The notes: generated by a model not told the origin, from the sequence alone. A DNA stretch of 64,000 nt from Hypanus sabinus (GCF_030144855.1 NC_082720.1:65596001-65660000), one strand, 5' to 3'; positions 1 to 27,898 are shown, counted from the stretch's first letter. Numbers and translations are program-made.

Positions 1-1344
1 TTTTGTTAATTTATAGTAAATCTATGTCTTTGAACCATCTTGCTGCAATGAAACAATCAACTTTACATCCTATAAGTCTGACATGAATTCTGAGTCCAAA
101 TTTTTGATTATTTCATTTAATCTACATGGTTTGACTCACAGTATTTCTCAAAATTCTGAATAGTTTTACCTTGAATATTTCATTGTTGATGGTTTATAAG
201 TTCTTGAAAATGCATTCAAAACATTGGGAAGCCTTAACTTGGGCACATCTGATATCTTGCACCTCCCCAGATTCCGCAATGTCACTTTGATCAGATTGGA
301 ACGATCTTGGAGATTACATGGGATGTCATTTCTTGCAACCTCTTGCACATTCTTTTAATCTCAGCCAAATAAGAGCAGATATTATTTAGTGTAAGCACAG
401 CAATGAGAAACAAGTCGAATGCTGATGTGTGTAGATTCAGGTTCAGATTTATTTATCACTGGTACATTGAAACATTCAATGAAATATATCATTTACATTA
501 ACAAGTAACACAACCTGAGGATGTGCTGGTGGCAGCCCGCAAGTGTCACCTACAATTCAGGCCTCTACTGCCTGCTCAAAGACAAGTGACTTGGACAGGT
601 AATGAAGGAAACACACAGATTTCATGCTGTCCATAGTCAGTGTGTCCTGGGATCAGATGACTGTATGAGCAGGAGGCATGAGAAGGTAGGAGCACAGCTT
701 AGTTGGCATGCCTTGAGTTTGGGGTTCCATCAATGTCTAGTCTGGATATCGATACCAAAGGTTGGAGCCTGAAGGTGAAATGAAAGTTCAGAATCTGAAG
801 CCCGACAGCTGGAGGCTGGAGTGTGATTGGGTGGGAGGGAGGGATGGGGTGTGTATTGCTGTTGTTGTTTTCTTCCATGTTATTCTCTGTGTTGTTCTGC
901 CAAGCAGTGTGGGCAGGGTACGTTGAACTGGAAAATGTGGTGAAATCAGTGGATTTTCTTCGTCATCCATCCCAGTCAACTGTTCATGTTGCTGGACATC
1001 AAATGTGGAACACAGAATGCAGAGTGGTGTTCTGGCCTCTAACCCCTCCATGTCATAGTCCCTAAAACTAATCTGATCCCTAACTTCCCCATATCACTAT
1101 TCCCAAACCATAACCTGACCTTTAACTCCCCTTTCTGTCCCCAAAACCAGCTTTCTGAACTTAAAAAGAGAACAACTAGTAACAGGAAATCATTTTAGCT
1201 GGTATTTTCAGTTACTTGTCTCAATCCAGTCCTGCTGGGCACAATGAGAATAACATTACATCAGGATTCCCTCAGACTCATTCCACTGTCCTTCTGTCCT
1301 CGGCCCCCCCCCCCACCCCGCCACAACTTTGATTTATTTTCTCA

Positions 1345-3675
1345 TGCGGTGAAATCATGTGTCAGAACGTGATTGGACAGAGTTCGGAGCACGTGCAGAA
1401 ATGATAGAATGATCGAGAAGCATGGCAATGTAAAACATGGTTTTGTTTTTGCTGTAAATAAAAGTACTAGTTCAATTCTTCCAGAATATGGTTTGTTATT
1501 AGTAACCCAGGGTACATATAAAGAACACAACATGGTCTCAGAAGTTGGACTGGAAGAATAATACATTTACTAGCACGGGAGAATCGAAGGTAATCAAAGA
1601 AAAAAAAGAGCACAAACTGTTTTGGTACTTGCTAACTGTTTTACAAATGGAAGGACTGCAACCTCCACTGTCACTTCATTTATCTAGGAATGTAGCTGAG
1701 AACTGGAGGAAATTCAAACAGCGTTTTGAAATATCACATATTTATCAGTGATCGGAGCACATAAAAGATGGGAGAAAACAAAAGCTGCGATTCTACTCCA
1801 CGTAATTGAGGTATATAACCATTTTATTTTTGAAAATGGAGATAATTTGAATTTAAAAGTGATAATGGACAAATTTGAAGCATTTTATATACCAAAGCGT
1901 AATGTAACGTATGAGTGATACAATTTTTTCATGTATACGCAGAGCGCTGATGGTATTATGATCAATTTGTTACAGACTTGAGACACCGCAGTAAAACATG
2001 CGAGTTTGGATAACTGACGGAATCTGTCATTAAAAACAGAATTGTTTGTGGCATTCTGGATGATGGTCTGAGAGAGAGACTGGAAGAGAACAAGATTTAG
2101 ATTTGGAATAAGCTTTCTTCCGCCGCAAAACTTCGGAAACTGTGACGCCGCAGGCTAACAAGCTTTTTATTGAGAAGTGCAACGTACACACTGTGCACAA
2201 ACATATTAGAAAAAATAATGAAGTGACAATGAAACTGACAGAAAGCAAGAATTCATCTGAGAGAAAAAATACTTGTGATTACTGTGGGCTGGAGCACCGA
2301 CCAAAACAGTGTCCAGAGGATTGGAAAATGTGCAACAACTGCGGTAGAGTAAATATTTTTCATGCTGTTGCAGAAGTAGAAAGAAAGTTTAAAAAGTAAA
2401 TGCAGTGCTTGAAAATGAACGAGGAGTTTCGTATAGATGTGCTTTGTGAAAACGAAGTAAGAATGACCGGACTATGCCATTGCAAGTGAACCAAAACAGT
2501 ATATTGTTTAAACTTGATAGTGGAGCACATGTAAATGTTCTTGCTGAATCTGCGTTGAATGCATTAAAGCCAAGACCAAAGTTATATCAGACAAATATAA
2601 AAGTGACCGTGTATTCAGGTGCAGACACTCCAGTTAAAGGAACATGTGTGGCAAAAGTATCACACAAAAATATGGTGCACACACTTTCATTTGTGGTGGT
2701 GCCAAAAAATGTACAGTCAATATTGGGTTTATCTGCCTGAGAGGGACTGAATTTGGTGAAAAGTGTATTAGGCCTGGATAGTGACACAGATTCAGAATGC
2801 AGTGACTTGATGAAAGGGCAAGACAGAACAGAATTTGATTCCAACACAGAAAAAGTAAAAGAAGTCATAAAGAAAGCTCCCAGACCCATCCCTTTGTTAT
2901 CAGCATCAGAGAACACATTGCCACCAAAACCAGGAGTTACAATATTGCCCTCTGGAAGTAATGCACATGTATCAATGGGCCATGCATTCCATCACAATCT
3001 CACCTCTTCAGGAGGATGGAGGCCAAACTTGCCAGTACAGTTCAATGCTGATCTGAACCCAAAAAGTGAAAAGAATCACAATCCAACTGAAGAAATAAAA
3101 GCACAAGTGAAGGAATTGAGAAGTTTTATTGAAATGATGAAGTCTCAGCATAAGAAAAGATATTGCACTGTCAACGAATGAATTATATGAAGAAAAGAAG
3201 TGGGAGGAATTAAGAAAGCTACAGTACTTGAAGAGGTACAACCCTCCAAACAGAGGAGGGAGCAGTGTTAAGAAATAGCAAAGACTTTAAGAAAGAGCCA
3301 GCTTCTGAGTTTCAGTTAACTGACACAGACCTGACTAAACATAGAAATAACAACGAAACACAAGATCTGTGTGAACCACAGAAAAGATCAACTCGTGTTC
3401 GTAAACCCCCAGAGAGACTGATAGAGACATGTTAAATTATGGATTTGCTCTTAACAATGTTGCTAATTGTTTTTCTTTTTATGGAAAGGAAGATGTGGTG
3501 ATATCACGTGTCAGAACATGATTGGACAGAGTTTGGAGAATGCGCAAAAATAATAGAATGATCGAGAAGCATGGCAGTGTAAAACATAGTTTTGTTGCTG
3601 TAATAAATAAAAGTTCAATTCTTCCAGAATATGGTTTGTTATTAGTAACCCACGGTACGTATAAAGAACACAAAA
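1345..3675 (+). mobile_element. Internally deleted Gypsy/Ty3 (Mag-like) LTR retrotransposon with both LTRs
   Basis: Related LTRs at 1345-1532 and 3494-3675. PBS TGGTCTCAGAAGTTGGAC (tRNA-Leu-like) at 1533 and PPT GGAAAGGAAGA before the 3' LTR. Flanks TCTCA/CCTCA form an imperfect 5-bp TSD. Gag motif NVAENWRKFKQRFE, Cys/His knuckle CDYCGLEH..C, protease FKLDSGA, and integrase tail RSTRVRKPPERLIE. No RT or RNase H. Confidence 0.93.
2816..3200 (+). pseudogene. SH3KBP1: Captured host coding fragment resembling the SH3KBP1 (CIN85) C-terminus, inside the Gypsy element
   Basis: Translates to ..KKAPRPIPLLSASENTLPPKPG..TEEIKAQVKELRSFIEMMKSQHKK, then after a 1-nt shift DIALSTNELYEEKK. This matches the recalled vertebrate CIN85 C-terminus ([45 protein letters not shown]). 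Confidence 0.72.
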
Positions 3676-4399
3676 CCTCAACACTGAACAGTGCATGTAT
3701 TTATTTACTGAGATACAGTGCAGTGTAGGAGTTTCCATTCCTTCGAGCCATGCTGCCCAGTAACATTACCCCCAACAACACCACCAATTTAACCCCAGCC
3801 TAGTCTCAAGACCATCCTGAACTACAAGAACTTTTGGCACTGAGGGTCTACCCCATCAGTGAGCTGCTTGCTGGTGGAGGTGCAGATTGTGTTGCTGCCT
3901 GCTACAGGGAGACATTGAAAGTATTGGAGTTCATTTGAAAAGGCAGTGTGCAGTGTAACAGTGGGTGATTGTCTTTGATGTTTCTCTTGTTAACATTGAG
4001 ATTCCGCAGGCCTATTTCCCTATTTATTGGTGAAACAGCTGGGGGGAAATTACATGGCTTCAGTTGCAGCGAAGTCCAGGCCCGAAGCTGTGGGGTTGTC
4101 CGCTGTTGTAGTACAGGAGAGGAGACAGTGGAGGAGATGTATCACAGCATCCATGTTGGGTTGGGGGCTGGTCTCTCCCCTCACTACTGCCCTCTAGTGC
4201 TCAGTTGGTGGAATGGAAAGCTGGATTGCTTGTGTGTGTAGTTTGTCTGCAGACTGCCAGGAAGTGCACCATCAGTTTGTGTTTTGTGCTGTGTATGTTT
4301 TGCACCTAGGCCCTGACGAACGCTGTTTCATTTGACTGTATTCATGTAATGTTGAATGATGTCTAACTTAAACTTGAATTGCTGTTACTTTCCTATCAA

Positions 4400-16311: not shown

Positions 16312-16386
<75 letters not shown>

Positions 16387-27818: not shown

Positions 27819-27821
27819 ATA

Positions 27822-27898
<77 letters not shown>
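27819..27898. repeat. (CA)n microsatellite
   Basis: About 80-bp CA run. Confidence 0.99.

What the first reader, a model, noticed from the sequence alone, without database searches (positions are those of the whole stretch)
1345..3675. Gypsy retrotransposon that swapped its RT/RNase H/integrase core for an in-frame SH3KBP1/CIN85-like host cDNA fragment
Seen: a complete LTR-PBS-gag-protease...integrase tail-PPT-LTR element with a TSD, in which about 385 bp (2816-3200) of non-retroelement sequence replaces the pol core. The insert continues in the protease reading frame, with one TGA at 2738 between them. It encodes a Pro-rich LPPKPG motif and a coiled-coil (EEIKAQVKELRSFIEMMKSQHKK..ELYEEKK). 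Established knowledge: this resembles the C-terminal oligomerisation coiled-coil region of the adaptor CIN85/SH3KBP1 (CD2AP family). Inference: template switching onto a co-packaged host mRNA, the mechanism of retroviral oncogene transduction, produced a non-autonomous element that then integrated here. Such capture is well known in retroviruses and plant LTR elements but rarely documented for vertebrate Gypsy elements.
Basis: partly seen in the sequence, partly recalled or inferred. Interest (0 to 1): 0.85.

Follow-up and report, generated by a model that had tools for sequence, protein, structure and literature searches.

The report
Ray retrotransposon carrying captured SH3KBP1 fragment
This is an old, decayed jumping-gene copy (a Gypsy-type LTR retrotransposon in a stingray-like genome) that lost its copying enzymes and carries an intron-free, in-frame piece of the host gene SH3KBP1 instead; it is a clear new example of a known process.

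Summary
Window 1345-3676 is a 2.3-kb LTR element. It has two ~185-bp LTRs (K2P 0.126), a CTCA target-site duplication, a TGG-start primer site, a broken gag, a protease domain (Pfam), an integrase C-terminal tail and a purine tract. RT, RNase H and the integrase core are missing: about 2.3 kb, measured on an autonomous-like relative. In their place, 2814-3219 is 82% identical at DNA level to a skate SH3KBP1 mRNA (E 1e-112) and 76% identical at protein level to Hemitrygon akajei SH3KBP1 (E 6e-58). The fragment stops 13 nt before the host stop codon and has no UTR or poly(A). In a sturgeon SH3KBP1 gene the same stretch is split by at least three introns, so the source was spliced mRNA. Three annotated stingray proteins are other copies. 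P0001 has an intact 321-aa ORF that is 88% identical to the host gene, with the same 3' junction but a different 5' junction. P0012 and P0014 also carry a Rabaptin fragment. The chimera therefore spread and recombined further. The mechanism is inferred, not shown: template switching during reverse transcription, then mobilisation in trans. This matches LTR-mediated retroposition (Tan et al. 2016). It is a new member of a known kind, of moderate interest.

The parts
1341..1344 (+). 5' copy of the target-site duplication (CTCA)
   Evidence: The same 4 bases directly follow the 3' LTR. Read as 5 bp the match is 4/5.
1345..1532 (+). 5' LTR (TG...CA)
   Evidence: Direct repeat with 3494-3675, 88% identical, K2P 0.126.
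1533..1550 (+). Putative primer-binding site (starts with TGG directly after the LTR)
   Evidence: Sequence. The LTR end and PBS stretch 1524-1557 is 79% identical to L003 22-55. The tRNA was not identified.
1647..2458 (+). gag, broken: at least 3 frame changes and at least 4 in-frame stops; includes a CCHC-type knuckle
   Evidence: tblastn of Gypsy gag-PR proteins P0085, P0088 and P0096; outer bounds 1647-2839. Break counts. Knuckle ORF 2142-2396.
2459..2815 (+). Protease domain plus the linker that leads to RT in intact relatives (1-2 in-frame stops, no frame change); catalytic D-S-G motif present
   Evidence: Pfam Asp_protease_2 31.9 bits and gag-asp_proteas 28.6 bits, both above cut-off. 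83% identical to the protease of P0001. Counts.
2814..3219 (+). Captured host cDNA fragment: the C-terminal ~139 codons of SH3KBP1/CIN85 (acidic linker, Pro-rich LPPKPG stretch, coiled coil), sense strand, in the protease frame at its start. Decayed: 2 frame changes, one in-frame deletion of about 7 codons, and 2 stops in the entry frame.
   Evidence: blastn to skate SH3KBP1 mRNA L002 1857-2271, 82% identity, E 1e-112. 76% over 113 aa to H. akajei SH3KBP1, E 6e-58. PDB 2n64/5abs. Second frame piece. Counts.
3220..3435 (+). Integrase C-terminal tail up to the pol stop codon (1 frame change)
   Evidence: The window's KRSTRVRKPPERLIE matches RKSSRNVKPPERLIE of L003; both lie 2 codons before the stop, downstream of the rve domain (E 6e-5). 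P0001's KKATVLEEVQPRSYMV matches KQTHVLSEVQPRSYTI of L003. Frames.
3483..3493 (+). Polypurine tract
   Evidence: GGAAAGGAAGA directly upstream of the 3' LTR.
3494..3675 (+). 3' LTR
3677..3680 (+). 3' copy of the target-site duplication (CTCA)

Best explanation
Window 1345-3676 is a dead copy of a non-autonomous Ty3/Gypsy LTR retrotransposon from a ray (stingray-like) genome. In an ancestor of this copy, about 2.3 kb of pol (RT, RNase H, and integrase zinc finger, core and part of the C-terminal domain) was replaced by about 415 nt of spliced SH3KBP1 (CIN85) mRNA. The fragment was joined in frame between the protease linker and the integrase C-terminal tail. The most likely route (inferred) is two template switches by reverse transcriptase between element RNA and a co-packaged host mRNA, at short purine-rich microsimilarities. 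The chimera kept its LTRs, PBS, PPT, gag and protease, so it could be copied in trans by autonomous relatives. It spread, and it recombined again: one variant has a different 5' junction, and others hold a Rabaptin fragment. This copy integrated with a CTCA duplication and has since decayed. It encodes no intact protein and has no evident function here. The host fragment is a passenger.
For: Shown: LTR pair, TSD, PBS-like site and PPT. Gag and protease homology. No RT, RNase H or integrase core in the element, while relatives L003 and L004 have PR-RVT_1-RT_RNaseH-Integrase_H2C2-rve. The tail is the integrase C-terminus. The insert is SH3KBP1: PDB 2n64/5abs; 82% DNA identity to a skate mRNA, E 1e-112; 76% to H. 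akajei SH3KBP1. Identity falls with distance: rays 72-79%, shark 63%, paddlefish 36%. The insert ends 13 nt before the host stop and shows no UTR or poly(A). The sturgeon gene has introns of about 2 kb at three or more points inside the captured stretch, with GT/AG boundaries. Other copies: P0001 (H. akajei, single-exon 321-aa ORF, 88% to the host gene, E 3e-73), and P0012 and P0014 (H. sabinus, H. akajei) share the protease and the SH3KBP1 coiled-coil part; P0001 also shares the 3' junction IKKA|TVLEEVQP. One of the window copy's frame changes gives the same out-of-frame ORF ending as P0012, which points to shared ancestry after the capture. Inferred: template switching and mobilisation in trans, by analogy with PMC5131818. 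With proxy sequences, a few bases of purine-rich similarity are visible at both junctions, and 'EVI.K' is shared by Gypsy and host at P0001's 5' junction.
Against: Neither the real parents (this species' SH3KBP1 mRNA and the autonomous element of this exact family) nor the DNA of the other copies could be fetched. Junction microsimilarity is therefore judged only on proxies that are 70-82% identical. Copy number is unknown: only three other copies were found, all through annotated proteins, and a search for short ORFs found none. The intron test uses a sturgeon gene, not the ray's. The TSD is only 4 bp. In-frame junctions could be partly ascertainment, because the relatives were found as proteins.
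Confidence: 0.85

Rival explanations
1. A LINE-made processed pseudogene of SH3KBP1 inserted into a Gypsy copy, and a later deletion removed the pol core. The element never moved as a chimera.
For: LINE sequences exist in this genome (RVT_1 + ALKBH8_N fragment at 43854-44670). Nested insertions are common.
Against: The insert has no poly(A), no 3' UTR and no flanking duplication, and it stops 13 nt before the host stop codon. Both junctions are in frame. The same 3' junction, or the same coiled-coil piece, recurs in structurally different copies in two species.
Confidence: 0.04
2. The chimera arose by DNA-level recombination or end joining between a Gypsy copy and an SH3KBP1 retrocopy or cDNA, not by RT template switching. 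It then spread as a non-autonomous element.
For: The end product would look the same. The true junction microsimilarity could not be measured (one search uses proxies).
Against: It needs an extra intermediate (an intron-free SH3KBP1 copy) for which there is no evidence. Repeated re-joining in the same family (P0001's 5' junction, the Rabaptin variants) fits recurrent template switching between co-packaged RNAs, as in PMC5131818.
Confidence: 0.08
3. The SH3KBP1-like stretch is a native accessory domain of this Gypsy family, or a chance coiled-coil likeness.
For: Coiled coils give spurious matches. The first PDB hit alone was weak (E 0.008).
Against: 82% DNA identity over 387 bp to an SH3KBP1 mRNA. 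88% protein identity of P0001 to the same species' gene, including the non-coiled Pro-rich part. The lineage-specific identity gradient. Autonomous-like relatives have nothing of the kind.
Confidence: 0.01

Closest known systems
LTR-mediated retroposition / chimeric retrocopies inside LTR retrotransposons (Tan et al. 2016, PMC5131818; earlier cases cited there: maize Bs1, rice LTR elements, HERV-K/FAM8A1)
   Same: An internal part of the element's ORFs is replaced by an intron-free, truncated piece of host mRNA. There is no poly(A) and no duplication around the insert. The LTRs are retained. The locus can act as a non-autonomous element and go through further cycles. Some cases combine two parental genes.
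   Different: The host is a cartilaginous fish; I found no report for that group. The element is old (LTR K2P 0.126), not recent. Both junctions are in frame with gag-PR and with the integrase tail. The family shows at least three junction variants in two genera, including a second captured gene (Rabaptin).
Retroviral oncogene transduction (acutely transforming retroviruses)
   Same: Replication genes are replaced by spliced host coding sequence fused in frame to gag or pol. The product is replication-defective and depends on a helper.
   Different: No env and no infectious cycle is implied. The captured piece is a scaffold/coiled-coil fragment without its SH3 domains. There is no evidence of any effect on the host. 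This is an analogy of mechanism only.
Non-autonomous LTR elements (LARD/TRIM-like; mouse MaLR with MERVL, as cited in PMC5131818)
   Same: LTRs, PBS and PPT are kept, the enzymes are lost, and mobilisation in trans is presumed.
   Different: This element keeps gag and protease and carries identifiable host coding sequence.
SH3KBP1/CIN85 C-terminal coiled coil (PDB 2n64, 5abs)
   Same: The insert covers the Pro-rich stretch and the coiled-coil region of the host protein.
   Different: It is only the last ~139 codons, has no SH3 domain, lacks the last 4 codons, and is broken in the window copy.

Membership tests
Ty3/Gypsy LTR retrotransposon | Two LTRs (TG...CA) flanked by a short target-site duplication | tested here: met
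   88% identical LTRs, CTCA on both sides.
Ty3/Gypsy LTR retrotransposon | PBS next to the 5' LTR and a polypurine tract next to the 3' LTR | tested here: met
   TGG start directly after the LTR and GGAAAGGAAGA before the 3' LTR. The tRNA partner was not identified (no tRNA in the window).
Ty3/Gypsy LTR retrotransposon | gag with a CCHC knuckle and a retropepsin homologous to Gypsy gag-PR | tested here: met
   Pfam protease families above cut-off; gag-PR proteins match 1647-2839, E down to 3e-40.
Ty3/Gypsy LTR retrotransposon | Domain order PR-RT-RNase H-integrase | tested here: met
   Met in relatives L003 and L004 (RVT_1, RT_RNaseH, Integrase_H2C2, rve, in that order). In the window only PR and the integrase tail remain, in that order.
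Autonomous Ty3/Gypsy element | Own RT, RNase H and integrase core | tested here: not met
   There is no such homology between 2815 and 3220. The space is filled by SH3KBP1 sequence. The element is therefore non-autonomous.
LTR-mediated retrocopy (PMC5131818) | Host-derived insert lacks the parental introns | tested here: met
   Tested by proxy. The sturgeon SH3KBP1 gene L001 has three or more introns inside the stretch. ORFs called on other vertebrate contigs (sources unnamed) end at the same exon boundary. The ray gene itself was not testable.
LTR-mediated retrocopy (PMC5131818) | Insert replaces internal element sequence; no poly(A) or duplication around the insert; truncated mRNA | tested here: met
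   host homology covers codons 526-664 of 668 in the skate mRNA and ends 13 nt before the stop. About 2.3 kb of pol is missing, measured on L003.
LTR-mediated retrocopy (PMC5131818) | Microsimilarity between element and mRNA at the switch points | tested here: inconclusive
   Only proxies were available: a few purine-rich bases at each junction. 'EVI.K' is shared at P0001's junction. The true parents are needed.
LTR-mediated retrocopy (PMC5131818) | Chimera behaves as a non-autonomous element (several copies) | tested here: inconclusive
   Three further copies in two species share the protease and the SH3KBP1 part. Their flanks could not be read, and no more copies were found.
SH3KBP1/CIN85 (origin of the insert) | Significant, lineage-specific similarity to SH3KBP1 rather than to other proteins | tested here: met
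   Every hit that carries a gene name is SH3KBP1, apart from a few fish entries with an evidently mis-transferred UniRef label; no CD2AP came back.
SH3KBP1/CIN85 (as a functional family member) | Three SH3 domains and a complete coiled coil in an open frame | tested here: not met
   It is a fragment only, with no SH3 domain, and it is broken.

The most novel reading that the evidence does not exclude
The chimera is more than a passenger-carrying parasite. In Hemitrygon akajei a copy (P0001) keeps an uninterrupted 321-aa protease / SH3KBP1 Pro-rich / coiled-coil / integrase-tail ORF and is annotated as a gene. All known junctions, including the Rabaptin ones, are in frame. The fused oligomerising coiled coil might be selected, either because it helps the element's own polyprotein assemble or be packaged, or because the host has co-opted it. 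The family would then be a vertebrate example of serial exon shuffling by a Gypsy element under selection.
Probability: 0.08. Interest if true: 0.8.

Novelty: new member of a known kind. Interest (0 to 1): 0.5.

Why it matters
This is a clean, fully dissected case of an LTR retrotransposon picking up spliced host coding sequence in a cartilaginous fish. I found no report of this for that lineage. The family kept shuffling: three different 5' junctions and a second captured gene, Rabaptin. That makes it a natural record of RNA-level recombination and exon shuffling by retroelements in a slowly evolving vertebrate genome. In practice, such chimeras are annotated as host genes ('rab GTPase-binding effector protein 1-like', 'uncharacterized protein') and can mislead studies of gene families. 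The window copy itself is dead and has no evident function.

Tried and rejected
(1) DNA around the three stingray copies (P0001, P0012, P0014) could not be fetched because the assemblies are too large. Flanks, LTRs and TSDs of the other copies therefore remain unread.

(2) A search for short chimeric ORFs with the window's 146-aa piece found nothing.

(3) Pfam on the insert and on the tail gave nothing useful. PDB searches on the second coiled-coil frame piece and on the tail gave nothing significant. The tail was settled only by comparison with L003.

(4) Rfam and tRNA scans of the window were empty, so the PBS partner is unidentified.

(5) No autonomous Gypsy lies in the window; the only RT is a LINE fragment.

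(6) L004 gave no tail match; its family is too distant.

(7) The middle coiled-coil exon of the sturgeon gene probably lies in an assembly gap, which I left as it is.

(8) Literature searches for SH3KBP1 retrocopies or for gene capture by LTR elements in elasmobranchs found nothing specific.

(9) Considered and rejected: a native accessory domain, a chance coiled-coil match, and a LINE-type processed pseudogene (see the rival explanations).

(10) Slips, declared as required. I also reasoned about where one frame change in the captured fragment lies and how it might have arisen. All comparisons rest on sequences returned by tools.

Full report
**1. What is in the window**

Two direct repeats, 1345-1532/3 and 3494-3675/6, are 88% identical: 183 aligned positions, 15 transitions, 6 transversions, one 6-bp indel, K2P 0.126. 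Both begin with TG. The 5' copy ends in CA and is followed at once by TGG, the usual start of a primer-binding site. A purine run (GGAAAGGAAGA, 3483-3493) abuts the 3' copy. CTCA lies directly outside both ends, at 1341-1344 and 3677-3680. No other copy of the element is in the 64-kb window. This is the signature of one integrated LTR element of 2.33 kb, far too short for an autonomous one.

**2. Element-derived coding parts**

Gag-protease proteins of Gypsy elements from fish and invertebrates (P0085, P0088, P0096) match 1647-2839 with E down to 3e-40. The ORF 2474-2737 passes the Pfam cut-offs for Asp_protease_2 and gag-asp_proteas and keeps a D-S-G catalytic motif.

Gag is broken by at least three frame changes and at least four stops. 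The protease part has one or two stops and no frame change.

The last 215 bp before the purine tract (3220-3435) are the C-terminal tail of integrase. I compared them with L003, an autonomous-like relative on a public assembly contig whose ORFs carry PR, RVT_1, RT_RNaseH, Integrase_H2C2 and rve in that order. In L003 the peptide RKSSRNVKPPERLIE lies two codons before the stop, downstream of the rve domain. The window has KRSTRVRKPPERLIE, also two codons before its stop (pairwise E 6e-5). Further upstream, L003 reads ...VLSEVQPRSYTIQTEDG... Chimera P0001 reads ...TVLEEVQPRSYMV, and the window reads TVLEEVQP... and then, in another frame, TLQTEEG.... The tail therefore has one frame change.

Measured on L003, the chimera lacks roughly positions 1415-3739. 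That is about 2.3 kb holding RT, RNase H and most of integrase.

**3. The insert**

The 146-aa piece 2741-3178 found the CIN85/SH3KBP1 coiled-coil structures 2n64 and 5abs as its best PDB hits (E 0.008). A full HMMER scan of 1.8 billion representatives returned SH3KBP1 proteins of coelacanth, sturgeon, gecko and mammals. Its best hit was a 321-aa stingray protein, P0001 (E 4e-50; names).

A region search then recovered the true SH3KBP1 of Hemitrygon akajei (P0191) and of other rays and sharks.
- The window piece is 76% identical to P0191 over 113 aa (E 6e-58).
- P0001 is 88% identical to P0191 over 128 aa (E 3e-73).
- Identity of the window piece falls with phylogenetic distance: rays 72-79%, horn shark 63%, paddlefish 36%. 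The donor was therefore a ray gene.

At DNA level, window 2814-3200 and 3197-3219 align to a skate SH3KBP1 mRNA contig (L002) at 1857-2227 and 2249-2271, with 82% identity and E 1e-112. This corresponds to codons 526-664 of 668. Host homology stops 13 nt before the host stop codon, and nothing resembling a UTR or poly(A) follows.

Within the insert, the window copy has two frame changes, one in-frame deletion of about seven codons, and two stops in the entry frame.

**4. Spliced origin**

The stingray gene could not be fetched, so I used a sturgeon SH3KBP1 locus (L001) as a proxy. There the captured stretch is split as follows:
- an exon ending ...APRPIQ with a GT donor;
- a 2.1-kb intron;
- an exon from GADLKAG... 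to ...MKSQHK, again with a consensus donor;
- a further 2.2 kb that holds an assembly gap, which I left alone;
- a last exon beginning at an AG acceptor with MEVEHIKK....

ORFs called on other vertebrate contigs (sources unnamed) end at the same ...QQK boundary. The element carries all of this as one contiguous stretch. The P0001 gene is a single exon of 966 bp. The source was therefore processed mRNA.

**5. Other copies and junctions**

Three annotated proteins are relatives of this chimera.
- **P0001** (H. akajei) has the protease, then about 50 more Gypsy residues than the window copy (up to ...DRMEQLEVI, which in autonomous relatives runs on into RT). It joins the host sequence at EVIKKAP. 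The host itself reads KVKEVIKKAP, so the two parents share 'EVI.K' at that switch point.
- **The window copy** joins earlier in the element (...SDLMK) and earlier in the host (QDRTEFDSN...; host EQERTEFDSN). It therefore holds host sequence that P0001 lacks.
- **The 3' junction**: P0001 and the window copy share it (host ...GIKKA, then integrase TVLEEVQP). One capture followed by a later recombination at the 5' side, probably with an autonomous element, is simpler than two independent captures.
- **P0012** (Hypanus sabinus) and **P0014** (H. akajei) have the same knuckle and protease. After ...DSDTE they carry an in-frame Rabaptin fragment (Pfam PF03528, 134 and 145 bits against a cut-off of 26.7). 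They then re-enter the SH3KBP1 coiled coil at EVKAQVKELRSF. This is a second host gene taken up by an already chimeric element.
- P0012 and the window copy end their ORF with the same out-of-frame peptide. They therefore share one frame change, which points to common descent after the capture, though a recurrent change cannot be excluded.

No further copies were found in the protein collections. The DNA of the three loci was not retrievable, so copy number and flanks remain unknown.

**6. Mechanism**

Shown: the anatomy, the host origin, the lack of introns, the truncation at both ends, the in-frame joins, and the existence of structurally different relatives in two genera.

Inferred: the chimera arose when reverse transcriptase switched twice between element RNA and a co-packaged SH3KBP1 mRNA. 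Because it kept its LTRs, PBS, PPT, gag and protease, it was then copied in trans by autonomous relatives.

[quoted passage not shown] There, parts of the element's ORFs are replaced by truncated retrocopies without poly(A), microsimilarity (median 6 bp) marks the junctions, some loci go through further cycles, and some combine several parental genes (PMC5131818).

With proxy sequences I see only a few purine-rich bases of possible microsimilarity at each window junction. This point is open.

**7. Rivals**

- A LINE-type processed pseudogene nested in a Gypsy copy is contradicted by the missing 3' end and poly(A), and by the junctions shared between different copies.
- A DNA-level join cannot be excluded, but it needs an extra intermediate.
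- A native domain or a chance match is excluded by 82% DNA identity to the host mRNA and by the absence of any such sequence in L003 and L004.

**8. Age and state**

LTR divergence of 0.126 and the many breaks show an old, dead copy. I give no date because the neutral rate in rays was not measured here. The window copy cannot encode a protein beyond short ORFs.

**9. Novelty and score**

What is new is the host lineage (no report found), the captured gene, and a family with several in-frame junction variants and a second captured gene. One intact copy is annotated as a gene. I rate it a new member of a known kind, with interest 0.5.

The least ordinary reading still open is that the in-frame coiled coil is selected in the element or co-opted by the host. 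I put that at about 8%. The in-frame pattern is partly an ascertainment effect, because the relatives were found as proteins.

**10. Declared slips**

I also thought about the location and possible origin of one frame change.

Noticed in passing
Not in the window: proteins P0012 (Hypanus sabinus) and P0014 (Hemitrygon akajei): Sister chimeras of the same element family. They carry an in-frame Rabaptin (RABEP1-like) fragment between the protease and the distal SH3KBP1 coiled coil, which is a second host-gene capture. P0014's Pfam Rabaptin match resumes after the SH3KBP1 piece; I cannot explain this.
   Followed up: partly
Not in the window: protein P0001 (Hemitrygon akajei, XP_072897951-3): An intact single-exon 321-aa ORF that fuses protease, SH3KBP1 fragment and integrase tail, annotated as an uncharacterised gene. 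Its 5' junction differs from the window copy's and its 3' junction is the same.
   Followed up: partly
window 43854-44670 (+): Two overlapping ORFs with Pfam RVT_1 and ALKBH8_N matches. This is a LINE-type retrotransposon fragment, unrelated to the Gypsy element.
   Followed up: no
window 16316-16386 and 27821-27898: Dinucleotide microsatellites (GA)n and (AC)n.
   Followed up: no
Not in the window: Phyllobates terribilis proteins P0008, P0010, P0060-P0067: At least ten short 'SH3KBP1-like' proteins that hold only the C-terminal part of the gene, spread over several contigs of a poison-frog assembly. No transposon part is visible, so this is probably a segmental amplification of the same gene end.
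   Followed up: partly
L001 about 41400-42160 (sturgeon SH3KBP1 intron): A tandem array whose units repeat the end of the preceding exon (each unit translates to ...SQHK followed by a stop). It runs into an assembly gap.
   Followed up: no
L003 (Logan DRR477420 contig, 4397 bp): A nearly complete autonomous-like Gypsy relative, about 70% identical in DNA to the window's gag and protease. It runs from the LTR end and PBS through gag, PR, RT, RNase H and integrase. Its pol is called as more than one ORF. The source organism is unknown.
   Followed up: partly
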